This document shows positions 5,262 through 41,980 of a stretch of 64,000 nucleotides of DNA, one piece after another. The notes beneath the pieces are model-generated. The model searched no databases. It had not been told where the DNA came from and was given only the letters and a program-made list of their open reading frames with translations. The position numbers were made by a program, and so were the translations under genes. This DNA is from Histomonas meleagridis 2922-C6/04-290x (taxonomy: Eukaryota; Protista; Parabasalia): positions 947,437 through 1,011,436 of the forward strand of contig JAANOX010000205.1 of the NCBI GenBank assembly GCA_020184695.1, given 5' to 3'. Every line of letters begins with the position of its first letter. Position 1 is the first letter of the stretch.

Positions 5262-7386
5262 ATGGAAATATGAAATCCAGAAAAATTTATTTAATATGAG
5301 AAATGTTTAGCATTAAAACAACATTGCATGTAGGGATGCGATAGTTGTTATTGGTTTATTCATCGTTTGCATCACAAATGAAAGACTTTAATATGTATTT
5401 AATGTTTTTGAAAAGTTTAGAAGGAAAATATAAAAATAAAACAAATATCATTCAAGTTTTTGTGAGATTTCTTTTGTTTTTAGAATCACAAGAATCAAGT
5501 TATCTATTAGAAAAGATGTTTGAAGAAGATTTGATTGACATTAACATATTAATAAAAAAGAAAAATTTATATTTTATCCATTACAATGAAAGTAAACGAG
5601 ATCAAGTTAGAAATTTATGGAAAAAATTGAATATAAATATTTTTATCTCTACCAAAAGAATTTAAAAACAATTCAAAAAATAATAAGAAAAAAATGTAAT
5701 GGAAATTATGAAGAGCTATCAAAAAATGATTGGAAACTTCGCAAACAATTAGTTAAAGAAGGAGTTAATCCGAATGAAATTGCGAAAATAATTCGAAAAG
5801 ATGAAATCGAAAAACTTCAAGAAATATCATCACGATATGATTTTGATTTTAATCAAACGATTGAACCATCACTTTATGAAAGATGTTCATTTATTAATAA
5901 AGATAATGTTTCATTAATGATTATGCAGCATTTTTTGGATCAGTTAAATGTTTTAAATATTTACTTATGAATGGTGCAAATGTGGAAAACACAGGTAAAT
6001 ATGCAGTTGCAGGTGGAAATGAAGAAATTATTCATTTATGTGAACAAAATCATTCAACATTTGAAGGTGCATATGAAGCAGCAATTGAATTTCATAGAAA
6101 TGATATCTTTAAATATATTTATGAAAATAAATTAGAAGAAATTGATCAAGAATTCAGATATTCTAAAGGCTCTTATTCATCTAAATGTTGTAAAGTAAAA
6201 AAATCATATGTATTAGGAGTTAAATGTATTTTAAGTAGTTCTTATAATCTTTTTTCTTATTTATTAAAAATAAATAAATTGAAGATATCAGATTTTATTC
6301 ACGTGTTATCTATAACAGGTAATTTATTTCTCCTACAAAATGCTGATAAAAACTATAGAATACCAAAAAATTTTTGTATTTTGTGCATAATGTCTGGAAA
6401 TGTTGAGCTTGTTAAATATGTTCTTAAAAGTTTCGATTTAGATATCAATGATAAAGATATATATATTCTATTTTTCTTTTGTTTTTATCAATAATTTAAA
6501 GTTATTTAATAACATTTGATTTTTATTTAAATCGTTTAATACAGCTCTTATTTGTGCATCTAAGTTTGTTTTAATTATTTCATATTTCGTATTAATATTT
6601 GGAAATTATTTAAATTATTTCACTCGGCACTTATGAAAGCTACTAAAAATAATGATGTAAAAATAGCTAAATTACTTCTTAAAGAAAAATGGATTGATAT
6701 AAATGGTAAAGACTTTTATCTGTTTTATTTTGGATTTATTTCAATAATTTAATAATTTAAAATAATTTCTAAATTTCGTTTTAAATATTTCTTACAGTGC
6801 TTATGATGGCGTCCATAAAAAATCAAACAAATTTGATGAAATTATTTTCAAAACATGAAAGAATTGAAATTAATGCTAAAGATGATTTTTATTTGTTTTA
6901 TTTATAATTTATTTTGATAATTTATAACTTCAAAATAACATTTGAAAATTATTCAATTTATTTAAAACTGCGCTAATGTTTGCAGCAAATGGCCAAGTAG
7001 AAGCAGTCAAATTACTTCTTGAACAAGAAGGAATTGATGTTAATGCAAGAATATTTATTTATTTTGTTTATTATTTATATTTAATAATTTTTGTTTCAAA
7101 ATTATATTTGGAAATTATTAAGCTTATTTGAAACAGCACTTATGAAAGCATATAAAAATGGTTACACAGAAATCGTTAAATCGCTTCTTGAAAAAAAAAG
7201 TATTAAAATTAATACTAAAAACACTTTTTAAAATAATTTGATATTTATTTCAATAATTTTTTATAAAAAAATATTATTTGAAATTTATTAGAAGTGTTTG
7301 AAACAGCTCTTTCATATGCATTGAAAAAAGATCATAAAGAAATTGTTGAATTACTATCTAAAAAAAATAAATGTATAATACAATAA
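5262..7386 (+). pseudogene. Disrupted DUF3447 plus ankyrin-repeat gene whose ankyrin repeats are separated by intron-like spacers
   Basis: ORF fragments 5345-5665, 5617-5970 and 5967-6494 are frameshifted pieces of one gene, paralogous to 1-899 (1-nt deletion near 5918 in SLIDYAAFFGS). They are followed by five stop-free ankyrin segments ending KKNKCIIQ* at 7386. The 5' boundary is approximate. Confidence 0.75.
6459..7302 (+). repeat. Array of ~170-bp units (87-93-nt ankyrin-coding segment plus ~80-nt AT-rich spacer)
   Basis: Intervals between the KD/R/N codon and the T of TAL: 6459-6540 (82 nt), 6714-6793 (80), 6884-6966 (83), 7051-7132 (82), 7223-7302 (80), plus a partly deleted one ending at 6620. 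Confidence 0.85.
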
Positions 7387-19513: not shown

Positions 19514-19594
19514 GACGACTTGGCCGAGTGGTTAAGGCGAGGGATTGCTAATCCCTTGTGCTTGCACGCGTGGGTTCGAATCCCATGGTCGTCG
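19514..19594 (+). tRNA. tRNA-Ser(GCT): tRNA-Ser, anticodon GCT
   Basis: Acceptor GACGACT/GGTCGTC, D-loop TGGCCGAGTGGTTAAGG, anticodon arm AGGGA-TTGCTAA-TCCCT, long variable arm, T-loop GGTTCGAATCC, then an oligo-T Pol III terminator. Confidence 0.97.
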
Positions 19595-25059: not shown

Positions 25060-26061
25060 TTAGTCATAATATGGGAAAGGAATTGGAAGTTCTGTTGGGA
25101 TTTGGATACAAGATACGTTACAGAATTGATCAATTGAATACTTTCTTCTTATAAAGTTCGCCTCATCTTTTCCAACTTGAAGTAATAATGCATGCGCAAC
25201 TTTACAATAGTGACAAAGATCTTCAAATGAATATTGCGTGTAAGCAGCAAGAGGTTCAGTCCAAGGCTCGACTCCGGCAATAGTTCTTGTCATCATCAAT
25301 GCAGTTGCTGCAATTGCTGATGGTTTAACGCTCATAAATTCAGCAGATGTCATACAGATTTCTGTTATGTATCGGGCAAACAACATAATTTGCAATGTTT
25401 GACCATTAAGGCGCAAAAATATGCTTAAAAAGAAGAGAATAGTTGGGAACTCAGTGTCAAATCCAATTAAGTTAATTAGATTGACTTCCATACTTTTGAG
25501 ATCATTTTCAGTAAATGCATTTTCTGCAATTGTAAGAATATCTTCAATCTGAATTGGTTGGATATCTTCGATTTTTGATGCAATAAGCATTGCAGCACTA
25601 CCAATAAGAGGAAGCTTACATCTAGAAATGTTGGTTCTTGAAATCACTCTATCTAAAATTCCAATACTACGATGGAATGTTTCGGTTGTTAGTTGGCATT
25701 TGTAATGCATTCTACAAAGCCAAAGAACCATAGTACTTCTGTCATTTGGTGTCATTTCCGTTTGTTGGACTGTGAATTCAGGTAAGTTTGTTTCACGAAC
25801 TCTCATTGAACGATAAATAATATGTTCAAATTCAGTCACATCCTGAGGGTCACATGGGAGACCAATTGGCAATTCCACATGAACGAATGGTTTATATGGA
25901 AGTTGTCGGCATAAAATGGGCTTTTGATTATTTTGGTTATTAGGATTTGGAGGTGTTGATCCAGTGCCATTTGATAGTAATGACAAAGGAACTCTTTGTG
26001 GCTTTTGTACCTGGGGCACTTGTTGGTGTTGGAAGCTCTTCTGGTGATTACCAAAAATCAT
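25060..26061 (-). CDS. Mitotic (B-type) cyclin
   Basis: D-box-like RVPLSLLSN and cyclin box DRSTMVLWL...ETFHRSIGILDR...LIGSAAMLIASKIED. The likely start is ATG 26061, because the longer ORF-track version overlaps the neighbouring gene. Confidence 0.9.
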   Translation of the reverse strand: MIFGNHQKSFQHQQVPQVQKPQRVPLSLLSNGTGSTPPNPNNQNNQKPILCRQLPYKPFVHVELPIGLPCDPQDVTEFEHIIYRSMRVRETNLPEFTVQQTEMTPNDRSTMVLWLCRMHYKCQLTTETFHRSIGILDRVISRTNISRCKLPLIGSAAMLIASKIEDIQPIQIEDILTIAENAFTENDLKSMEVNLINLIGFDTEFPTILFFLSIFLRLNGQTLQIMLFARYITEICMTSAEFMSVKPSAIAATALMMTRTIAGVEPWTEPLAAYTQYSFEDLCHYCKVAHALLLQVGKDEANFIRRKYSIDQFCNVSCIQIPTELPIPFPYYD

Positions 26062-26207
26062 TTTAATGCTAAACGTATGAAAACGTATGTACAAACGTAC
26101 GCTTAAAAGAAAAAGTGCATATATTTGCCAACCGAATAAACTTCGAACGAATGACACTTTTTTGTATATCACAATTGTCAAAAATTTCACAATTGCTGAA
26201 TAAGCAG
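26062..26207. promoter_or_regulatory. Divergent promoter region with three AAACGTA repeats
   Basis: 146-nt spacer between the cyclin and synapsin ATGs. AAACGTA(T/C) occurs at 26071, 26081 and 26093. Confidence 0.5.
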
Positions 26208-27395
26208 ATGGAAAAAAAGATTCCAACAGTTCTTGTTGTTGCAAATCCTCATGAAAATTGGTATAAGCTTTGTCAAGACTATGCTGACGTTTTCAATGTT
26301 GAGCAAGCTTGTTGGGAAGATATTTCCCTCACTTCCTATCCAACAAAAGTAATGGTTAATCTTACTGCTTCCAAATATCCAATTCATGAAAGCCAAAAGA
26401 AACGCAGAACAATCAGTCCAGATTTAGTTGTTGTTCGTATGCTTTGTCGATACATCGGCCGACTTGGTACATCACCAGACTATCGTAATGTATTATATGG
26501 TTTCATGCATGCTAACATTCCAATGATTAATTCCTTTTCAGCTCTTTTATGCGAAATTGATCGACCATTAATGGTAGGGCGTCTTAAATTAATCCAAAAA
26601 CGTCTTGGAAAGGAGAACTTCCCTGTTATTCCACAACATTATTATTCCCAATCCCAAGAGATGATCATTACTCCTCAATCTCCATATGTTCTTAAAGTCT
26701 CATATCCGCATGCCGGCTATGGCAAAATGCGCATCAACAACAGTGACCAAATGGATGACATCAAAAGCGTCTTACACTTACACCATGATTACATATCAGC
26801 CGAACCGTTTATTAATTCCGAATATGAAGTTCGAATTGTATACATAGCTCCCGACTATTATAGAGCCCACAAGCGTAAGTCCTTTGAATGGAAAGTTAAT
26901 TATGGCGTTACAAATGAACGTGAAGATATCGAAATGACGCCTAAATACAAAATGTGGGTCGACGCGATCAAAAACACATTTCCCGACATGGACACGTTCT
27001 GCATTGATAGTATCATCGACAAGGAAGGGAAAGAATATATCCTCGAAGTTAATGGATCAGCACAAGGATTCGCACCGGAGCATAACGACGAAGAACTCGC
27101 GAAGATGAGGGAGCTCGTGATGCGAAAGCTGAAGTTAATCGAAGAAAATAACGAAAATGGCGAAAAGAAGCTAATGCTGGAAAGCGAAAAGGATCTCGAG
27201 ATATTGAACTTGAAGAACAAGAACACGTTTTTGGAAACTAAGATCGAGAATTTGGAAAGAAGAAATAAAATGATTCAATCGGATGGCCCAATACCAGAGG
27301 AAGAAGGCGATGGAAACGTTCTGGTGTACGGATTGATCGCTGTGCTGGCAGCTTTGGTATTGTTCCAGTTCTTCTTGATGTGGAAGCGACAATGA
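26208..27395 (+). CDS. Synapsin-like ATP-grasp protein with C-terminal coiled coil and TM anchor
   Basis: PDLVVVR, DYRNVLYGFMHANIPMINS, LGKENFPVI, PYVLKVSYPHAGYGKMR, AEPFI..EYEVRI, WKVN and YILEVNGS match the synapsin C-domain. The C-terminus is LVYGLIAVLAALVLFQFFLMWKRQ*. Confidence 0.85.
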   Translation: MEKKIPTVLVVANPHENWYKLCQDYADVFNVEQACWEDISLTSYPTKVMVNLTASKYPIHESQKKRRTISPDLVVVRMLCRYIGRLGTSPDYRNVLYGFMHANIPMINSFSALLCEIDRPLMVGRLKLIQKRLGKENFPVIPQHYYSQSQEMIITPQSPYVLKVSYPHAGYGKMRINNSDQMDDIKSVLHLHHDYISAEPFINSEYEVRIVYIAPDYYRAHKRKSFEWKVNYGVTNEREDIEMTPKYKMWVDAIKNTFPDMDTFCIDSIIDKEGKEYILEVNGSAQGFAPEHNDEELAKMRELVMRKLKLIEENNENGEKKLMLESEKDLEILNLKNKNTFLETKIENLERRNKMIQSDGPIPEEEGDGNVLVYGLIAVLAALVLFQFFLMWKRQ

Positions 27396-27609: not shown

Positions 27610-27941
27610 TTGTTGGAAAATGATTAAAAAGTTTAAAAGTGTAGATTTTGTGTTAGCGCAAATGAAATTTAAATGCTAATGCAAAGCGAATTTGTTTTTG
27701 ATAAATAATAAACAAGCGATATTTTGGATGTAGCAAAGCTTTCTGAAAATAATATTTGGTGATAGAGAATGGCTTATGTTTAGCTAAAGTGTCTCTAACA
27801 TGATGCTTACCTGTTACAGAAGAAATTCGACTCAAATAAAGCATTTTAAGCTTTCACGTGTCCAAAGGTTTAACACTGCAATTTACATTAATAATTTTGA
27901 AAATCGAAAATTAAATTCGTTTAGAAATAAAAACCATTTGA

Positions 27942-30900
27942 TCACAGCCATGGGTACCAACCACTATACATTGCGCACAAGTTTTCCTGACTAGTAGCGC
28001 TTTGTATAAGCTTATCCACATGTTTCTTTACGTCCATTTCCACTTCTCCCAAGTCATTACCGTTCAATTTATCCTTAATTCTTTTAACAATTCCATCATC
28101 TTTAATCAAAGGGTCTACATTAAACACCTTCAATATTCCAAGTATTTGTTGCTTATTATTTCTTAATAATTCCATAACATATTCACAACAACTCCTAAAC
28201 GTTCCCTCAACCTCCGATACCTCCATAGCGGTTATAAACGATCTCGTCAATCTAAACGGCACCTTTTCGGGGCACCTCTTTCTTTTCATTGAAATTTCGA
28301 AGCATTCTTTGTAGTCAATATTAATAATTTTGCCGGAGACCGTTTGCATCAAAATATTTTGAAAATGTCTGTTTCCAATACCAATTAAATAACCCAAAAT
28401 CGAAGAAGCCACTAAAGAAGTAGTATAATTAATTCTTCTTACTAACCAATGAGTAGAATTAGAAGCTTCTAATAATAAAATCGATTTAATTTCATCACCT
28501 TCAGTATCTTTAATACTTAAATTATATCTTTTTATCTTTTCATCCAAAGATAAATTGTCATAAGAAACGTTACAATTTTTTGATGCGATTTTATATTCAT
28601 AATTTTCGATGATGTTTGGCTTTTTACTTGAACGAATTCTTTTTATTATATGATTTAAAGTTTTACTACCAGAGAACCATGAAATTATACCGACTTCGTT
28701 TGAGAATGGTATGACTTTATTTATAGATATTGTTAACTTTTGTGAGAATGGAATTGATGAATGATTAATTATCGCGTTTATATAATTAAACAAGTTCATA
28801 ATTCGATGTTGGATACGTAAATCCTCATTATTAAGTATGATGAAAATATATTTTTTACCATTTGAACCGACAAATACAATTTTTAATTGTCGTTCTTTCG
28901 ATTTAATAATTTGTATTTCGTTTTGTACATTATCTATAGTTATTAACTTCTCATTATTATTATCATATGTACCGGGAATTATAATTTCAAGTTTACGTAA
29001 GTGTTTAATGTCAGTGATTGTATCGATTAATGATAATGTTTTAGGTGTTTTAATGATTTGATTAATGATATTTAATATTTTTGAATATATTTTTAATGAT
29101 TTATTTATATATTTCGAATTATTTGTTTCATTATATTTGTTTATATTCTTTTCAGCTTTTGTTAATACATTTTCAAATAATTTAATGAAACAAATTTCTT
29201 TAAATGTCTTTTGTTTAGTTTTAGTTTCATTATGTAAATCTAATAAATTATTAATAAATGTTTCGGGTTTATTGGAATGTAATAACTTCGTAATCAAAAT
29301 TTGCCATTTGTTCCATAAAGTTAATGAAATATTAATCATTTCATTTGAAAACAAATCATATTGTAAGAATAAGTTCAAATGTTTTGTTGTCGAATTAATA
29401 CGATTAATTAAATCAATTATTAATTCTTTTTGAGGTAAATTACTTTTAATTGGTACATATAAATATTGTAATATTAAATGTGGATGTTCATTTGATACAT
29501 TATATAAAATCTCTTCAATTAATTCCTTTAAGTTTTCGTTATTAATATTATTTAGTTTTGCTATTAAATATGGAATAGAATTTAACCAAAAAATCGATGG
29601 AATTTTATATAAGTTTTTCATTAAAAGTTTATAAATTTCTTCATTCCCATATTTAAATAACTTTGAAATGATTAAAAACAAAAATTTATCATTGTCATTA
29701 TCAATAGAAATAATTCCATTTAATAAAGCTTTAAATGAATTTATTAAATAATTTTCATTACTTTTATCTTCTTTAAATAATTCGAAGTTAATTTTTCCCC
29801 AAATTGTCCATAACTCAGATAAATTATCATTATTTTTATCATTAATAACATTCTCTAATATTGATTTTGCTTCTAATTTCTTATTCATTGATAATAACCA
29901 TTTAGTTAATATAATTCGTGAGTTAACATTAACTAAATTATTTGATATTAAATTAATTGCTTCATCTTTTTTATTTGATTTCCATAATATTTGTGACTTA
30001 TAAAGATTATAAATGTTATTCATTTCGATGTTATTTTTATTCTTTTTAATTAAATTACTTAATAATGATTGTGCAATTTGTATTTTGTTTTCTTCAATTA
30101 ATGAATTAAATAAACGATTCCAATATATATTTAATTGTGAATTATTTAATACAATCGAATGAATACAAATGTTTTCTAATAATATCGTCGAATCATTTGT
30201 TAATCGATCGAATCTTGATTTCCATTTATTTGTTATATTATTTAATTTTTCTTTGATTAAATTCGATTCGATTAAATCACTATTTACTAATTTTATTTGT
30301 AATTTCTTATATTCAATAACTTCTTCAATTTCATTTAAGTTACTTAAAACTGAAAAATTATAATATAAATTATCATAATTTTCAGAATCTAATGATAACA
30401 TTTGATAAGAATTTTCGAATTGTGTTAATAATAATTTTTCAGCTTCATCGAATTTATCATTAATTATATAATAATAAATTTTATATAAATTATCATCTTT
30501 TAATTTGGATGCAATTCGATTAAATTTACTCTTCTTAAATAAATACCAACATGAAGCTGTTTTATACAAAGGGAAATTATTAATATTTTTCTCTTTAATT
30601 AATTGATTATAATTATGTAATGAATAAAGACAATTAAATTTGCCTTTAAGTAATTCAATATCATTTGATGAATTCTTAAGTTTTTGTTCATATATTTTTA
30701 ATGCTTTATCCCATAAACCTAATTTTTCATATAATTCTAATTTCTTGTTTTTAATGTTTATGTTCATTTTCTTAGTTTTAGTTAATATACCTTTAGCTGC
30801 TAAATTTAATCCAAGTTTTTGATTTATATTTATTAAATCTTCAATCGAATCATTAAATAATTCTTCTGATTGTCGAAGTGATGGATATAAGAAATCATTT

Positions 30901-33900
30901 TCGATTTCCATTTTAATAATATTTTTAATATTAATATTTGGTAATTTAATTTTTAATGTTTCTAAAATTTCGAAAAAGTTTACGAATAAACGTAAAACAT
31001 TTTTTGGTACATCTTTAGAAGTAGTTATAACATTAATAGTTGTTAAAATTCGTTGATTTTGTTCTGGATTTACTACTAATAAAACCATTGCTATAGGTAC
31101 TAATGATTCTTTAATTAAATTATATCTTTCAGCTATTGTTATACATGAAGAAATTGCTTTAGATTTACAACATCGAATTAATTGTATAACAAAGTCTTCC
31201 ATCCATGCAAGCCATTGATTTTCATTAAATTTATTTGATGGTAAACTAAACTCAGTAACTTTATCATTAATAACTTGACATCTTGAAGCTTTTTTAGAAT
31301 GCGATATTGTACTTTGAATAATTTTTTTGTTTAATTTTTGATCTTTTTTATTATTATCCATTAAATCATACAAATTTGATAATTCATTAATTTCTTCTGT
31401 TGATAAAATATTTTTAAGTTTCGGTAAATATGATTTTATATTAACATTATTCTTTAATGAAATTACTTGTAATAATTCAAATGATTTTTCTTTTAATGAG
31501 AAATTAATTGTAATTATATTAATTATAAAACGAATAATTTGTGGTAATGATTTAGTTAAATCACTTTGATTAACAATTACTGTTAAACTTTGTAAACAAT
31601 CATTACAAATAGTTGTATTATTAATATTAATTAATAACCAACTAAATATTTTCGGATATATCATATGATCATAATATTTAATTGATTCACCAAATGATAT
31701 AAATGCTGATAATATTGCTAATACTTCTTTCGAATTATAATTATCGAATTGTGACGTGAATAAATAAGCAAATCTTGATAAATATGGTTGAATCGCTTTA
31801 GGTATAATTTTCATCATCCATTCGAAATCTAAACATAACGTAACTTTATCAAGTGAATTCCATTGTTCACAAATAAAATCAACAACATTTGGTACTAATG
31901 GATTAAAATATGATCCTAAAACAGTTAAAAATATTGTCATGTTATTTAATAATAATGTTTCAAATGCTTCTAAGTTTGTCTTTAATAAGTTTTGCAATAA
32001 TTTGACTAATTCTTTTTGATATACTTCGGATAATATTCTGTTATTTTTTAAGATTGATACTAATGCATCTATTGATATAGTTCTTAATGATGTTAATGAT
32101 TCATTTGATAATATTTCGAAAATAGATGAAAATGTAATTGATAATGAAGCGAAAATTAATTTCTTTTCGACTGATTTCGATTTACATTTATTATAAAATG
32201 AAAATAACCCTTTAACATTAAATGAATTAATGTTAATATTATTTTGATTTTTACTATATTGATATAAATCATAAGGTTTAATTGGACCAATTGTAGAAAT
32301 AGCTTTAGTTAATAAAACTAATGATATATCAGAGTTATTTAATTTGGTTAAATATAATAACTTTGATATTAAAAATGAATAATCAGTTAATATTAATGAT
32401 TGCATTTTTGTATTATTCATTATGTTAATGAATAATTTTAATGCTGAATTTAATTGTTTTGGTGTCGAATGAATTATTAACGAATTATTTAATATAGTAA
32501 CTATTTTGTTTAAGTCACATTTATTAGGTTCAATTAATATTAAATTCGATAATAATAATAATGAACTTGATGATAATTGTCCATTAAAGTTTTGGATTTG
32601 TTCATATAAAAATGATATAAATGGATAAAATAATATTCGTGCTTGATCAGAATCTAATGAATTTATCGTTTGATCACTTAATACTAAAAAATATTTTATT
32701 GCTTTTGAGTTCATTAATGAGTTTAAATTAATTTCCACAAATTTCTCATTTAAGAAATTCATTATATTTGTTTTAGCAGTTTGTTCTTTGATAAATAACA
32801 TTAAATATTTAAATGATTCAAGTGATATTTTCTCATTTGAATCATGTAATAAGATTCGAATATATGGAATAATTATCGGATCTTTAGGTTCTTTATATAA
32901 ATTACGAAATGTTTGTAAACGTAATTCTTCATTACTTTCAATAGAGATAACAGATAATATTTCAATCACAATGGATATCGATGGGTTTTTCTTTTGATAA
33001 TCTAAAATGAAATTAATAGCTGATTTACGTGTTGATAAATTCTTATTATACATTTGGATACAATATCTTAAAACTGTTGGTAATGATAATATTTCACTTG
33101 AGATGTTTAATTGGATTAATGATTGAAATCCATTACGTATTAATAATGGATTACTTGATGAGTTTAATAAAATTGGATTTAATGCTGATATTACAGGTTT
33201 ATGAATTCTTGCTGTTAAAGTTGGAATTATTTTTAATAATTGACATATTCCTGAAGTAATTAATGGTGTAATTTGTAATGAATTAAAAATTAAGATTATG
33301 TCATCATATAAAGTTTTGGTATTAACTGTTAATATCGATATAAATGAATAAATACTTTGTTCGGAATCCATTTGTTTAGCAATTAATTGTTTACATTTCA
33401 TAATAACATCAACTTCTTCACCAAAACATCGATTTTGTGCAAAGATAAACCTTCCCATTGATTCTAATGATTCATTTCGAAATTGTAATTTCTTATGTAA
33501 AATATTATATATTGATTTATAATATGTTAATATTTTTTCTTGTGTAAATAACTCGGGATTTGTTCGAAAGATTAATGGAAATAATAAAAATGCACCAATT
33601 TTGTTCTCATGTTCTCGTGATAAAAATTCCATAGGTAACTTAGTGAATTTAAACGCTGTTGTTAATTCAGGACGTTCATTTAAAATAATTTCACATGCTT
33701 TGACGGCACTTTCGTATAAAGATGTGAATTTCTCTGTGTTTGATAGGCCTGCAACAAGTTTAGAGACAAAAAGTCGTGGATTAAAGTTAATACTTTTATC
33801 TTGATCATTCTCCATAAGGTATTTTATAAGTGATAATGAAATAGTAGATACTTGTGTGGATGGTGAAAAAATTCCTAATGATAACATGTTCATCACAAAA

Positions 33901-34469
33901 TCTACTTGCGCTTGTAAACAACTGGGAAATCGGCGAAGAAGTAAATTGAGTAAACAGTATGATGTTATAACATGATCAGTGTCCATTTGACTCCATTTCT
34001 TCATATTTGATCGAAATGGTTGAAGAACCATTTGAAATGATGAATGAAGAGATTTGGATAAATATGTTAGGACTCTGTCTAATAAGTAATATGACTGAGG
34101 ATTTGGTCCAAGATCAACTGTTAATACATCTTTGGCAATTCTATTGGCTTTATATACTTTATCACCTACATCAACATCTATGAGTAAGGAAATTAAAATC
34201 AGATAGTCTTTATGATTTTTTTGCTTTAGAGTTTTATTTGAAATATCATTAAATAATTTATTAATATCGAATTTTTTCTGTCTAGATTGGGAAGAAATGA
34301 AATTCTTGAAGTTAGAAGCCAATGAGCTAAATTGATATTTGTCATTATTGTTACACATCAAAATTAAATTGTCTATGTAAGCTTCTTGAACATCATTAAT
34401 ATTAAGGCCCGCAGAATTTGTATCGATTGTGTTTAGGTTTATGCTCGCTGGTTTCTTCCTTAAACTCAT
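27942..34469 (-). CDS. TOR-like PIKK protein (HEAT-FAT-FRB-like-kinase-FATC) with degenerate catalytic motifs
   Basis: 2175 aa. IKSKERQLKIVFVGSNGKKY, EKVPFRLTR, GTFRSCCEYVMELLR and the FATC-like end LIQSATSQENLCAMYSGWYPWL. Confidence 0.9.
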   Translation of the reverse strand: MSLRKKPASINLNTIDTNSAGLNINDVQEAYIDNLILMCNNNDKYQFSSLASNFKNFISSQSRQKKFDINKLFNDISNKTLKQKNHKDYLILISLLIDVDVGDKVYKANRIAKDVLTVDLGPNPQSYYLLDRVLTYLSKSLHSSFQMVLQPFRSNMKKWSQMDTDHVITSYCLLNLLLRRFPSCLQAQVDFVMNMLSLGIFSPSTQVSTISLSLIKYLMENDQDKSINFNPRLFVSKLVAGLSNTEKFTSLYESAVKACEIILNERPELTTAFKFTKLPMEFLSREHENKIGAFLLFPLIFRTNPELFTQEKILTYYKSIYNILHKKLQFRNESLESMGRFIFAQNRCFGEEVDVIMKCKQLIAKQMDSEQSIYSFISILTVNTKTLYDDIILIFNSLQITPLITSGICQLLKIIPTLTARIHKPVISALNPILLNSSSNPLLIRNGFQSLIQLNISSEILSLPTVLRYCIQMYNKNLSTRKSAINFILDYQKKNPSISIVIEILSVISIESNEELRLQTFRNLYKEPKDPIIIPYIRILLHDSNEKISLESFKYLMLFIKEQTAKTNIMNFLNEKFVEINLNSLMNSKAIKYFLVLSDQTINSLDSDQARILFYPFISFLYEQIQNFNGQLSSSSLLLLSNLILIEPNKCDLNKIVTILNNSLIIHSTPKQLNSALKLFINIMNNTKMQSLILTDYSFLISKLLYLTKLNNSDISLVLLTKAISTIGPIKPYDLYQYSKNQNNININSFNVKGLFSFYNKCKSKSVEKKLIFASLSITFSSIFEILSNESLTSLRTISIDALVSILKNNRILSEVYQKELVKLLQNLLKTNLEAFETLLLNNMTIFLTVLGSYFNPLVPNVVDFICEQWNSLDKVTLCLDFEWMMKIIPKAIQPYLSRFAYLFTSQFDNYNSKEVLAILSAFISFGESIKYYDHMIYPKIFSWLLININNTTICNDCLQSLTVIVNQSDLTKSLPQIIRFIINIITINFSLKEKSFELLQVISLKNNVNIKSYLPKLKNILSTEEINELSNLYDLMDNNKKDQKLNKKIIQSTISHSKKASRCQVINDKVTEFSLPSNKFNENQWLAWMEDFVIQLIRCCKSKAISSCITIAERYNLIKESLVPIAMVLLVVNPEQNQRILTTINVITTSKDVPKNVLRLFVNFFEILETLKIKLPNINIKNIIKMEIENDFLYPSLRQSEELFNDSIEDLININQKLGLNLAAKGILTKTKKMNINIKNKKLELYEKLGLWDKALKIYEQKLKNSSNDIELLKGKFNCLYSLHNYNQLIKEKNINNFPLYKTASCWYLFKKSKFNRIASKLKDDNLYKIYYYIINDKFDEAEKLLLTQFENSYQMLSLDSENYDNLYYNFSVLSNLNEIEEVIEYKKLQIKLVNSDLIESNLIKEKLNNITNKWKSRFDRLTNDSTILLENICIHSIVLNNSQLNIYWNRLFNSLIEENKIQIAQSLLSNLIKKNKNNIEMNNIYNLYKSQILWKSNKKDEAINLISNNLVNVNSRIILTKWLLSMNKKLEAKSILENVINDKNNDNLSELWTIWGKINFELFKEDKSNENYLINSFKALLNGIISIDNDNDKFLFLIISKLFKYGNEEIYKLLMKNLYKIPSIFWLNSIPYLIAKLNNINNENLKELIEEILYNVSNEHPHLILQYLYVPIKSNLPQKELIIDLINRINSTTKHLNLFLQYDLFSNEMINISLTLWNKWQILITKLLHSNKPETFINNLLDLHNETKTKQKTFKEICFIKLFENVLTKAEKNINKYNETNNSKYINKSLKIYSKILNIINQIIKTPKTLSLIDTITDIKHLRKLEIIIPGTYDNNNEKLITIDNVQNEIQIIKSKERQLKIVFVGSNGKKYIFIILNNEDLRIQHRIMNLFNYINAIINHSSIPFSQKLTISINKVIPFSNEVGIISWFSGSKTLNHIIKRIRSSKKPNIIENYEYKIASKNCNVSYDNLSLDEKIKRYNLSIKDTEGDEIKSILLLEASNSTHWLVRRINYTTSLVASSILGYLIGIGNRHFQNILMQTVSGKIINIDYKECFEISMKRKRCPEKVPFRLTRSFITAMEVSEVEGTFRSCCEYVMELLRNNKQQILGILKVFNVDPLIKDDGIVKRIKDKLNGNDLGEVEMDVKKHVDKLIQSATSQENLCAMYSGWYPWL

Positions 34470-34783: not shown

Positions 34784-36316
34784 TTACAATTTGCATACAA
34801 CGACACCAGTGTTTCCCTGTGAAACAAAAGCCTTCAAACCTTTCATTCGACACAAATCTAATATGTATGGACGGAGAACAGGCATTCCCCCAGCAGAGTG
34901 AATTCCTTTTCCTGTGATAAAGTTAACTTGCGCAACGTTTCCGGAGATTATCGCATTTTCTATTGTCTGGTTAAATTTTTGATGAGCTTTCATGATCGTA
35001 TACCCATGAAGATCAATTGTGATAATTCTCTTCGGCCCGTGGGGCCTTCTTACAATTTTACTTCGGGGAGCTTCTGTAACGAGTTTACGAGCAATGTCAA
35101 CATTTCCATTTGCTCTTGAAATGGCTTCCTTAGCTTGTGTTATTGTTAAATCTGGTCGAATGGAGAAAATTTCATCTTCAAGTGGAGGCTGTTCAAATGA
35201 GTGTTGAAGAAGGATTTCAGCTGCAGTATCGAAATCATTTCCTTTAAGTGCATCACGAATGATGTTTGTTGGCATTGCCGGAAATATTTCTTGTAGTTGA
35301 GATACAATTGGATCTGTTGTTACGCTAAGTTTTGTTGGGTTTCTTTGAACAATGATATTGATTGCTTGTTCGACATCTCCTTTTGCCATGTCAAGTGATT
35401 CTTCTAAGACGTCATTGCTATAATTAGGGAAAATGTCTTTGAGTTGCTTGACATTACTTTCTCTAAGAAGAGTCGGATTCACTAACGGTTTCAGATCGTT
35501 CGGGATTTCTTTGACCTTTGAATTCCTCGGCGGTTGTGCGGCGGTTTTTGATGACTTTTGGGGCAATGGAAGCTGAGGGAACGAGTTCAATGTTTTCTGC
35601 TTCCTTCTTTTCCGGTTCTGGTTGCGATTCTGCTTAATGGTTGGATTCATTTCCGAAAGGATTTGAATTGCAACCTCAAGTGAATTTCCGGCTGCTTCAA
35701 GAGCATTTCGAAGAACATCTTCTTCAATTTTTGGAAATGCTTCTTTAAGAATTGCGACCGAATTTTTTGGTTGCGATTGGTTACTATCTGATTCTTGGCT
35801 TTGCGTTTCATAGAGATCCATTTCATCAAGAAATTTTATTGCTTCTTCAACTGAATTACCTGCTGCTTCAAGAGCATTATTGAGAACATCTTCGCTTAAG
35901 TTTGGAAAACTTTCTTTGAGAATTTCAATTTGTTTCTTTGTGGATGGTTCATTTTCTTGTTTTATTGTTTCAAGTTCTTCATAGTGGTTAAGCATTAACT
36001 TTGCTGCTTGTATTCCTTGTATAGTTTCCTTTACGTTGAATTTAAAGTCTTCCAAATAAATATAACACAATTCATCACTCATATCAGGAAATTGTTTTTG
36101 TATTTCCTTCACTTGGTTTTGAGCGTTGTCATTTTCATTGTTTATAATTATATCGGTATTGTTTTCTGGAGAATATATAATGTGTAAAGTTTCATTTGCT
36201 TCATCAAAGGGCATCCAGCTTAGTATATCACTGCATTCTTCGTATGTTGAAAAAGGATTTAATTTTAGTAGTTCTTCAACTCTTTGTGAGCTGTTTCGAT
36301 TGTTTTCTGCAAGCAT
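34784..36316 (-). CDS. Multi-CUE/UBA plus Smr-domain protein (Cue2/N4BP2-like)
   Basis: About six L/I.E.FP...L..AL...GN...AI..L repeats and a C-terminal Smr domain IDLHG...FITGKGIHS...LRP...GNTGVV. Confidence 0.85.
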   Translation of the reverse strand: MLAENNRNSSQRVEELLKLNPFSTYEECSDILSWMPFDEANETLHIIYSPENNTDIIINNENDNAQNQVKEIQKQFPDMSDELCYIYLEDFKFNVKETIQGIQAAKLMLNHYEELETIKQENEPSTKKQIEILKESFPNLSEDVLNNALEAAGNSVEEAIKFLDEMDLYETQSQESDSNQSQPKNSVAILKEAFPKIEEDVLRNALEAAGNSLEVAIQILSEMNPTIKQNRNQNRKRRKQKTLNSFPQLPLPQKSSKTAAQPPRNSKVKEIPNDLKPLVNPTLLRESNVKQLKDIFPNYSNDVLEESLDMAKGDVEQAINIIVQRNPTKLSVTTDPIVSQLQEIFPAMPTNIIRDALKGNDFDTAAEILLQHSFEQPPLEDEIFSIRPDLTITQAKEAISRANGNVDIARKLVTEAPRSKIVRRPHGPKRIITIDLHGYTIMKAHQKFNQTIENAIISGNVAQVNFITGKGIHSAGGMPVLRPYILDLCRMKGLKAFVSQGNTGVVVCKL

Positions 36317-41865: not shown

Positions 41866-41980
41866 GAACAAGAAGGAATTGATGTTAATGATAAAGATAT
41901 TTTTTTGTTCTATTTTGGATTTATAATAATAACTTGAAATTAATGCAATGTTTCAAGGAACTGTTTTGAGTGAACAGCTC
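41866..41980 (+). pseudogene. Orphan ankyrin remnant carrying the same spacer element as 6459-7302
   Basis: EQEGIDVNDKD (41866-41898), a 75-nt AT-rich spacer beginning ATTTTTTTGTTCTATTTTGGATTT, then ACAGCT (TA). Confidence 0.7.

What the first reader, a model, noticed from the sequence alone, without database searches (positions are those of the whole stretch)
28308..28835. Full-length TOR-like protein has lost its catalytic residues (candidate pseudokinase)
Seen: the ATP-site motif reads YIFIILNNEDLR (Leu at 28833-28835), the catalytic loop reads GIGNRHFQN (Asn at 28371-28373), and the Mg-binding motif reads NIDYK (28308-28316). Established: mTOR has FVFLLKGHEDLR (K2187), GLGDRHPSN (D2338) and HIDFG (D2357), and loss of these inactivates PIKKs as in TRRAP/Tra1. 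The 6.5-kb frame is intact with HEAT, FAT and FATC regions. Inference: an independently evolved TOR-derived scaffold or decoy. The changes are substitutions, not homopolymer errors.
Basis: partly seen in the sequence, partly recalled or inferred. Interest (0 to 1): 0.7.

Follow-up and report, generated by a model that had tools for sequence, protein, structure and literature searches.

The report
Catalytically dead TOR paralogue in Histomonas
The poultry parasite Histomonas meleagridis has a full-length, transcribed but unannotated copy of the growth-control kinase TOR that has lost two residues needed for catalysis while keeping its large scaffold, so it is probably a non-catalytic "pseudokinase", which the reviews I found report for only one other member (TRRAP) of this kinase family.

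Summary
Window 27942-34469 (-) is an intact 2175-aa TOR (FRB, kinase and FATC domains; best solved match is mTOR). The ATP-site Lys (mTOR K2187) is Leu, and the catalytic Asp (D2338) is Asn.

The sequence is identical in two DNA samples and in contigs from a separate, probably RNA, study. GenBank's annotation calls no gene here.

Phylogeny places it in TOR, not TRRAP. It belongs to an old parabasalid TOR orthogroup whose Trichomonas vaginalis, Tritrichomonas foetus and T. musculus members keep all catalytic residues. It is not a recent copy of the two active Histomonas TORs (AU p = 2e-7), so the inactivation is specific to the Histomonas lineage.

The HEAT and FAT scaffold is as conserved as in active relatives. 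The FRB, kinase and FATC parts have diverged much more. Three other degenerate TOR-like proteins from metagenomes appear to have lost catalysis independently.

Best reading: a TOR-derived pseudokinase acting as a scaffold or regulator. Its partners and biochemical inactivity are untested.

The parts
27942..34469 (-). Intact 2175-codon ORF (plus stop) encoding the TOR-like protein. No gene is called here in the GenBank annotation.
   Evidence: The chance of 2175 sense codons at this base composition is about 1e-94, and the other five frames hold 70-353 stops. The annotation of GCA_020184695.1 calls no gene over the identical ORF.
29370..34469 (-). HEAT-repeat and FAT alpha-solenoid scaffold (residues 1-1700).
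   Evidence: Weak Pfam hits to mTOR_dom and HEAT_ATR. Identity to six active clade-A TORs is 26/27/30% for N-HEAT/M-HEAT/FAT, the same as for catalytically intact relatives.
29061..29342 (-). FRB domain (residues 1710-1803), degenerate. It has a four-residue gap where TORs have the EEAS/DEAS motif that includes mTOR S2035, and W2101->Leu, Y2105->Ser, F2108->Leu.
   Evidence: Pfam FRB_dom E = 5e-10, 39.9 bits against a cut-off of 24.7. Alignments.
28104..28850 (-). PI3K/PI4K-type kinase domain (residues 1874-2122).
   Evidence: Pfam PF00454 E = 3e-44. The AlphaFold2 model of residues 1596-2175 has pLDDT 91 and matches mTOR at TM 0.93, rmsd 2.3-2.4 A.
28833..28835 (-). Leu1879 (CTT) in place of the ATP-site Lys (mTOR K2187).
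28809..28811 (-). Gln1887 (CAA) in place of the conserved Asp of RQDER (mTOR D2195).
28371..28373 (-). Asn2033 (AAC) in place of the catalytic-loop Asp (mTOR D2338). His2035 and Asn2038 (H2340, N2343) are kept.
28308..28316 (-). Asp2052-Tyr-Lys in place of DFG. The metal-binding Asp (mTOR D2357) is kept, and the Gly is replaced by Lys.
27945..28037 (-). FATC domain (residues 2145-2175).
   Evidence: Pfam PF02260 E = 8e-14.
27904..27941 (-). Probable short 3' UTR. Contigs from two separate, probably RNA, runs end at 27910 and 27904, 32-38 nt past the stop codon.
   Evidence: records 18 and 25; sequence. The RNA status of these runs is the tool's guess.

Best explanation
This is the Histomonas meleagridis member of an old parabasalid TOR paralogue group. 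In the Histomonas lineage it has become a pseudokinase. Shown: it keeps the whole TOR architecture and a confidently predicted TOR kinase fold, and its reading frame has stayed intact. It is probably transcribed. It has lost the ATP-phosphate Lys and the catalytic-base Asp, along with several other ATP-site residues and the aromatic FRB pocket. Inferred: it no longer phosphorylates substrates and would not be expected to bind FKBP12-rapamycin. Selection now acts mainly on the HEAT/FAT solenoid, so it most likely works as a non-catalytic scaffold or regulator. It would assemble TOR-type complexes, either alone or paired with the two active Histomonas TORs, or it would hold TOR partners away from them. 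It keeps both metal ligands and the hinge Trp, so it may still bind nucleotide as a structural cofactor.
For: Identity as TOR: Pfam FRB, PI3_PI4_kinase and FATC hits; mTOR is the best PDB match by sequence (1e-91) and by fold (TM 0.93).

Lost residues: K2187->L, D2195->Q, D2338->N and DFG->DYK. D2338A is a standard kinase-dead mTOR allele, and N2343 and D2357 are the metal ligands (bioRxiv 10.1101/2024.10.12.618044; PMC2173600; PMC8391992).

Catalytic motifs: among about 250 TORs examined, the four full-length degenerate proteins (this one, P0051, P0146, P0174) have lost the catalytic Asp; a few others show isolated changes (the fragment P0236; P0093 and P0118).

Real sequence: no differences in two DNA samples or in a contig from a separate study. 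In that run the contig depth is 38 inside the gene and 1.6 just outside it, and the contigs end 32-38 nt after the stop codon.

Maintained by selection: the chance of the ORF is about 1e-94 despite a terminal branch of 1.5-1.6 substitutions per site. The model has pLDDT 91.

Loss limited to the catalytic module: identity to six active TORs is 26/27/30% in N-HEAT/M-HEAT/FAT, against 20-24/28-32/28-33% for active relatives. It falls to 25% in FRB (relatives 29-46%), 40% in the kinase domain (53-60%) and 44% in FATC (49-62%).

Lineage-specific loss: the orthogroup with T. vaginalis P0302, T. foetus P0292 and T. musculus P0006, all catalytically intact, has support 95/92 and 98/98. Grouping it with the active Histomonas pair is rejected at p = 1.9e-7.
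Against: No biochemistry was done. Some kinases lacking a canonical residue keep weak or atypical activity (from my own knowledge: WNK uses a relocated Lys; HER3 has Asn at the catalytic base). This protein keeps H2340, N2343, D2357, E2190, the hinge Trp and the PFRLTR activation-loop motif. It also has new lysines near the site (GKK before the strand, and Lys in DYK), whose roles are unknown. The RNA status of the runs is the tool's guess, and contigs cannot measure expression. No close orthologue exists (best identity 33-40%), so dN/dS could not be computed. The long branch and skewed amino-acid composition make its exact place within the orthogroup uncertain (90/65). The scaffold or decoy role and the partners are pure inference.
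Confidence: 0.72

Rival explanations
1. It is still an active kinase with a non-canonical mechanism, for example another Lys replacing K2187 and Asn or His acting in place of the Asp base. In that case it would be a very divergent but catalytic TOR.
For: Both metal ligands (N2343, D2357), H2340, E2190, the hinge Trp and the PFRLTR activation-loop motif are retained. The fold is predicted with high confidence. New lysines lie close to the site in the sequence (GKK1873-1874, Lys2054).
Against: Two independent essential residues are lost together, and 14 of 60 near-invariant columns are changed, clustered at the ATP site. The kinase domain has lost 13-20 identity points compared with active relatives, while the scaffold has not. 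The FRB substrate and rapamycin pocket is also degraded. D2338 substitution alone inactivates mTOR.
Confidence: 0.1
2. It is a gene on its way out: a redundant TOR copy drifting towards a pseudogene with no remaining function.
For: It has the fastest-evolving branch in its orthogroup (1.5-1.6 against 0.4-0.7). Catalytic residues are lost. Parabasalids carry many TOR paralogues, so redundancy is plausible.
Against: The 2175-codon frame is intact in 23% GC DNA, where a random frame hits a stop about every 10.5 codons (P about 1e-94), and this after roughly 1.5 substitutions per site. HEAT and FAT are conserved as in active paralogues. The fold is predicted confidently. Contigs from two probable RNA runs cover it. 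The sequence is identical in the two sequenced samples and assemblies.
Confidence: 0.08
3. The substitutions are sequencing or assembly artefacts, or the protein is really a TRRAP/Tra1 orthologue.
For: None found.
Against: There are no differences in contigs of about 520-640x depth from two DNA samples, in contigs from a separate study, or in a second assembly. Lys to Leu (CTT) needs at least two base changes. An FRB domain is present, mTOR is the best sequence and fold match, no TRRAP/Tra1 chain is among the 60 PDB sequence matches listed or the top 50 structural matches, and the protein sits inside the TOR clade at 100/100.
Confidence: 0.02

Closest known systems
TOR/mTOR (FRAP) kinases, in particular the parabasalid paralogue group containing T. 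vaginalis P0302, T. foetus P0292 and T. musculus P0006
   Same: Same length class (about 2150-2230 aa). Same HEAT-FAT-FRB-kinase-FATC order. The predicted kinase fold superposes on mTOR at TM 0.93. It carries motifs typical of parabasalid TORs and sits in that orthogroup with support 95/92 to 98/98.
   Different: It lacks the ATP-site Lys and the catalytic Asp, plus D2195, the DFG Gly and other residues. The FRB aromatic pocket is degraded. The catalytic module evolves much faster than in its relatives. Identity to its nearest relatives is only 33-40%.
TRRAP/Tra1, described in reviews as the only PIKK pseudokinase (PMC7464330, PMC8926402, PMC8625110)
   Same: A giant PIKK that keeps the HEAT/FAT/kinase-like/FATC architecture, has lost catalytic residues, and works as a scaffold.
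   Different: TRRAP is an ancient, separate PIKK branch found across eukaryotes, without an FRB domain. This protein is derived from TOR within parabasalids, keeps an FRB-like domain and two metal ligands, and is about 1500 residues shorter (TRRAP size from my own knowledge).
Engineered kinase-dead mTOR alleles (D2338A, D2357E)
   Same: The same catalytic-loop Asp is replaced. Kinase-independent, scaffold-type functions of such mTOR alleles have been reported (PMC2173600).
   Different: Those are laboratory point mutants. This is a natural gene that has adapted over a long period, with many further changes around the site.
Degenerate TOR-like proteins from metagenomes: P0051, P0146 and P0174
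   Same: Full-length, parabasalid-type TORs with Asn at the catalytic Asp and 15-29 changes at the 60 near-invariant columns. P0051 shows the same pattern of conserved scaffold and decayed catalytic module.
   Different: Each has lost a different set of the other residues. P0051 keeps the Lys but lost the DFG Asp. P0146 keeps the Lys and has HLNHQT. P0174 has Gly at the Lys. They are not sister to this protein (AU p = 0.011 for P0051; P0146 and P0174 lie in another clade) and share no gene neighbourhood with it.

Membership tests
TOR (FRAP) subfamily of PIKKs | HEAT-FAT-FRB-PI3K-like kinase-FATC architecture, with the FRB domain immediately before the kinase domain | tested here: met
   Pfam FRB_dom 39.9 bits (cut-off 24.7) at residues 1710-1803, PI3_PI4_kinase 152 bits at 1874-2122, FATC 51.6 bits at 2145-2175.
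TOR (FRAP) subfamily of PIKKs | Groups with TORs rather than with other PIKKs | tested here: met
   PDB: mTOR/Tor2 1e-88 to 1e-92, against SMG1 1e-43, ATM 1e-40 and ATR 1e-37. Fold search: mTOR TM 0.93. Inside the parabasalid TOR clade at 100/100. The trees held TORs only, so the separation from other PIKKs rests on the PDB and Pfam scores.
TOR (FRAP) subfamily of PIKKs | Catalytic residues: ATP-site Lys (K2187), catalytic Asp (D2338), and metal ligands N2343 and D2357 | tested here: not met
   Lys->Leu and Asp->Asn. N2343 and D2357 are kept. It is therefore a TOR by descent but not a typical TOR kinase.
TOR (FRAP) subfamily of PIKKs | FKBP12-rapamycin pocket of FRB (S2035, W2101, Y2105, F2108) | tested here: not met
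   Four-residue gap where TORs have EEAS/DEAS (includes S2035); W2101L, Y2105S, F2108L. Some active parabasalid paralogues also lack the Trp (for example T. musculus P0006).
TOR (FRAP) subfamily of PIKKs | Assembly with LST8 and Raptor or Rictor-type partners | not testable with these tools
Pseudokinase (operational definition: kinase fold lacking at least one essential catalytic residue) | Kinase fold retained | tested here: met
   AlphaFold2 pLDDT 91 and pTM 0.87; rmsd 2.3-2.4 A to mTOR structures. This is a prediction, not an experimental structure.
Pseudokinase (operational definition: kinase fold lacking at least one essential catalytic residue) | One or more of Lys, catalytic Asp or DFG Asp missing | tested here: met
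   Two of the three are missing.
Pseudokinase (operational definition: kinase fold lacking at least one essential catalytic residue) | No phosphotransfer activity | not testable with these tools
   This needs an in-vitro kinase assay.
TRRAP/Tra1 | Orthology to TRRAP/Tra1, with no FRB domain | tested here: not met
   An FRB domain is present. No TRRAP/Tra1 chain is among the 60 PDB sequence matches listed or the top 50 structural matches.

The most novel reading that the evidence does not exclude
Parabasalids expanded TOR into a multigene family: at least 4 paralogues in T. vaginalis, at least 6 in T. foetus and at least 3 in Histomonas. They have repeatedly converted spare copies into TOR-derived pseudokinases. 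My data indicate at least three independent conversions: this gene, P0051, and the P0146/P0174 lineage. An unchecked note reports a fourth candidate in this same genome. These dead TORs would form a new class of PIKK pseudokinase that pairs with, or competes against, active TORs to tune growth signalling.
Probability: 0.4. Interest if true: 0.72.

Novelty: new variant of a known kind. Interest (0 to 1): 0.58.

Why it matters
TOR is among the most conserved signalling kinases in eukaryotes, and reviews describe TRRAP as the only catalytically dead PIKK. A natural TOR-derived pseudokinase with active sister genes in the same cell would be a ready-made system for separating TOR's scaffold functions from its kinase functions. 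It would also show how large kinases are repurposed after duplication. In practical terms, the gene is missing from the public annotation of a poultry pathogen. The protein would not be expected to respond to rapamycin, and its ATP site is strongly altered, which matters for anyone considering TOR inhibitors against trichomonads.

Tried and rejected
1. Exact look-up of the protein in the 15-billion-protein collection. It is absent, although two neighbouring genes are present. The cause is that the GenBank annotation calls no gene over the ORF.

2. Search for close orthologues. A word-based search of the kinase region and an exhaustive HMMER search of residues 976-2175 found nothing above 40% identity. 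dN/dS was therefore not attempted, because synonymous sites would be saturated.

3. 'All four degenerate TORs form one ancient dead clade.' The kinase-only tree put them together with support of only 11. With FAT plus kinase they separate, and query+P0051 as sisters is rejected (p = 0.011). I dropped this idea. I had read the shared motifs S[IL]KIYS, CFI and GKKY as synapomorphies of query and P0051; they are either orthogroup-level or convergent.

4. 'Recent Histomonas-specific duplicate.' Not rejected on the kinase domain alone (p = 0.085), but rejected on 1289 columns (p = 1.9e-7).

5. Synteny between the window and the contigs carrying P0051 or P0146. None was found.

6. A search starting from P0146 for named relatives returned only distant TORs.

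7. Literature searches for a TOR pseudokinase or for Trichomonas TOR found no description. That library lacks most subscription journals, so this is weak evidence of novelty.

8. The other degenerate TOR paralogue noted by the scan (DRH to ERN) could not be retrieved with the tools available.

Full report
**What is there**

Window 27942-34469 on the minus strand is one uninterrupted ORF of 2175 codons, in DNA of about 23% G+C. Pfam finds three domains above their curated cut-offs: a PI3K/PI4K-type kinase domain (residues 1874-2122, E = 3e-44), a FATC domain (2145-2175) and an FRB domain (1710-1803, 39.9 bits against a cut-off of 24.7). It also gives weak hits to mTOR-type HEAT regions. Against the PDB, the C-terminal 552 residues match mTOR and yeast Tor2 at 1e-88 to 1e-92. 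SMG1, ATM and ATR follow at 1e-43 or weaker, and no TRRAP/Tra1 chain is among the 60 matches listed.

**Organism**

The organism is Histomonas meleagridis (Parabasalia, Tritrichomonadida). The neighbouring genes are exact NCBI proteins. The same ORF, base for base, lies on GenBank contig JAANOX010000205.1 of assembly GCA_020184695.1. Earlier notes of this scan had already named the organism.

**The observation**

- The ATP-site Lys (mTOR K2187) is Leu1879 (CTT, 28833-28835).
- The catalytic-loop Asp (D2338) is Asn2033 (AAC, 28371-28373).

The third claim is wrong in substance. In NIDYK, the Asp that corresponds to the metal ligand D2357 is still Asp (GAC, 28314-28316), and the second metal ligand N2343 and H2340 are also kept. 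What changed around it is H2355N, F2358Y, G2359K and D2360E.

Further ATP-site changes are D2195Q, Q2167E, P2169Q and R2170L.

On the roles of these residues: D2338 orients and activates the substrate hydroxyl, D2338A is a standard kinase-dead allele, and N2343 and D2357 bind the metals (bioRxiv 10.1101/2024.10.12.618044; PMC8391992; PMC2173600). The role of K2187 in contacting the ATP phosphates rests on my own knowledge of PI3K-like kinases.

**Is it more than chance or error?**

I aligned about 250 TORs from two database searches. Sixty columns of the FRB-kinase-FATC region are at least 95% conserved in 211 catalytically intact TORs. Those TORs deviate at a median of 0 columns (90th percentile 2). 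This protein deviates at 14, clustered at the ATP site.

Contigs from two DNA samples (depth about 520-640) cover 27700-33600 without a single difference. So does a 3419-nt contig from a separate 2023 study.

That last run, and a 2013 run, are probably RNA:
- Contig depth is 38 inside the gene and 1.6 just outside it.
- Their contigs end at 27910 and 27904, which is 32-38 nt past the stop codon.

The RNA label is the tool's guess, and contigs cannot quantify expression.

**Is the gene maintained?**

At this base composition a random frame meets a stop about every 10.5 codons. The chance of 2175 sense codons is about 1e-94, and the other five frames hold 70-353 stops. The terminal branch is about 1.5-1.6 substitutions per site. 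The frame has therefore been kept open through a long period of change.

An AlphaFold2 model of residues 1596-2175 has mean pLDDT 91 and pTM 0.87. It superposes on mTOR structures (6bcx, 4jsp) at TM 0.93 and rmsd 2.3-2.4 A.

**Where it comes from**

Parabasalids carry a TOR multigene family. Named proteins retrieved here include:
- at least four from T. vaginalis;
- six from T. foetus;
- two catalytically intact ones from Histomonas, P0007 and P0010, at other loci.

On 1282-1289 columns (FAT plus kinase) under a site-heterogeneous model, the protein sits inside the parabasalid TOR clade at 100/100. Within that clade it falls in an orthogroup with T. vaginalis P0302, T. foetus P0292, T. musculus P0006 and several metagenome proteins. 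Support is 98/98 without P0302 and 95/92 with it. The branching order in that group follows the species relationships, with Trichomonas outside and Tritrichomonas and Histomonas inside. All named members keep Lys, DRH and DFG.

Holding the protein together with the active Histomonas pair costs 76.8 log-likelihood units (AU p = 1.9e-7). It is therefore not a recent decayed duplicate. It is the Histomonas representative of an old paralogue that lost catalysis in its own lineage.

Its exact position within the group is less certain (90/65), because the branch is long and the amino-acid composition is skewed.

**Which parts decayed**

The table gives mean identity to six active TORs of the other main clade.

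| Region | This protein | Catalytically intact members of its orthogroup |
|---|---|---|
| N-HEAT | 25.8% | 20-24% |
| M-HEAT | 27.2% | 28-32% |
| FAT | 29.5% | 28-33% |
| FRB | 25% | 29-46% |
| Kinase domain | 40% | 53-60% |
| FATC | 44% | 49-62% |

The scaffold is under ordinary constraint, and the catalytic module is not. Shared AT-driven composition may inflate the HEAT values against the Histomonas members of the reference set.

In the FRB, the segment around S2035 is deleted, and W2101, Y2105 and F2108 are Leu, Ser and Leu. FKBP12-rapamycin binding is therefore unlikely. S2035T alone gives rapamycin resistance in mTOR (PMC2173600).

The activation-loop motif PFRLTR and the C-terminal end of FATC remain.

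**Other dead TORs**

Three full-length parabasalid-type TORs from metagenomes are also degenerate: P0051, P0146 and P0174. All three have Asn at the catalytic Asp. Each has lost a different further set of residues, with 15-29 of the 60 conserved columns changed.
- P0051 lies in the same orthogroup but nearer the active Tritrichomonas proteins. Forcing it to be sister to this protein is rejected (p = 0.011).
- P0146 and P0174 lie in a different clade.

On these trees, inactivation happened at least three times. P0051 shows the same pattern of conserved scaffold and decayed kinase.

An unchecked note of this scan reports a further Histomonas TOR paralogue with DRH changed to ERN. I could not retrieve it.

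**Mechanism**

Shown:
- a TOR by descent and by predicted fold;
- two essential catalytic residues and the FRB pocket lost;
- the reading frame maintained;
- the scaffold conserved;
- probable transcription.

Inferred: no phosphotransfer, and a scaffold or regulator role. My preferred version is that it assembles TOR-type complexes without activity. It would do this either by pairing with the active TORs (TOR complexes are dimers built through the HEAT regions; this is my own knowledge) or by holding shared partners. Retained metal ligands and the hinge Trp leave room for nucleotide binding as a structural cofactor.

Rivals are residual atypical activity (about 0.1), a gene drifting to loss (about 0.08), and artefact or TRRAP orthology (about 0.02).

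**Novelty**

Reviews state that TRRAP is the only PIKK pseudokinase (PMC7464330; abstracts of PMC8926402 and PMC8625110). My searches found no paper on a TOR-derived pseudokinase or on TOR paralogues of trichomonads. That library lacks most subscription journals, so this is weak evidence. The protein itself is in no public protein set that I could search, because the GenBank annotation skips the ORF.

I rate it a new variant of a known kind: pseudokinases, and PIKK pseudokinases in particular, are known. Interest is moderate to good. The sequence case is solid and the recurrent pattern is attractive, but the function is untested and the organism is hard to work with.

Noticed in passing
window 27942-34469; L005 11848-18375: The GenBank annotation of H. 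meleagridis assembly GCA_020184695.1 calls no gene across this 6.5-kb ORF. The protein is absent from the protein collections searched.
   Followed up: yes
proteins P0001, P0002, P0302, P0136 (T. vaginalis); P0126, P0041, P0292, P0296, P0128, P0133 (T. foetus): TOR is a multigene family in parabasalids, with at least 4 paralogues in T. vaginalis and 6 in T. foetus, falling into several well-supported orthogroups. I found no paper describing this.
   Followed up: partly
L001 8505-15059 (P0051); L002/L003/L004 10001-16534 (P0146); P0174; P0236 (728-aa fragment): Other degenerate TOR-like genes sit on compact contigs with long uninterrupted called genes from gut or environmental metagenomes. All of the full-length ones have Asn at the catalytic Asp, and each has a different further set of losses. 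Their host organisms are unknown.
   Followed up: partly
protein P0119 (Tritrichomonas musculus, 2040 aa): A very divergent TOR-like protein without a recorded FRB Pfam hit groups on a long branch with P0117, a row of the outgroup set, rather than with the parabasalid TORs. This may be long-branch attraction or another odd PIKK.
   Followed up: no
window 26115-27395 (+): A protein with Synapsin N-terminal and Synapsin ATP-binding (ATP-grasp) domains (E = 7e-41) lies directly downstream of the TOR-like gene. Its mechanical ORF overlaps that of the cyclin gene (25060-26244, -) by about 130 nt, probably because of over-extended non-ATG starts.
   Followed up: no
window 34784-36316 (-): The upstream neighbour encodes a protein with three CUE domains plus a C-terminal Smr domain, which suggests a ubiquitin-binding nuclease-type protein.
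   Followed up: no
window 5345-7386 and 41866-41980: Earlier notes of the scan place interrupted ankyrin genes with 17-nt non-GT-AG inserts in this same window. I did not examine them.
   Followed up: no
window 19514-19594 (+): A single tRNA-Ser (GCT) gene is the only tRNA in the window.
   Followed up: no
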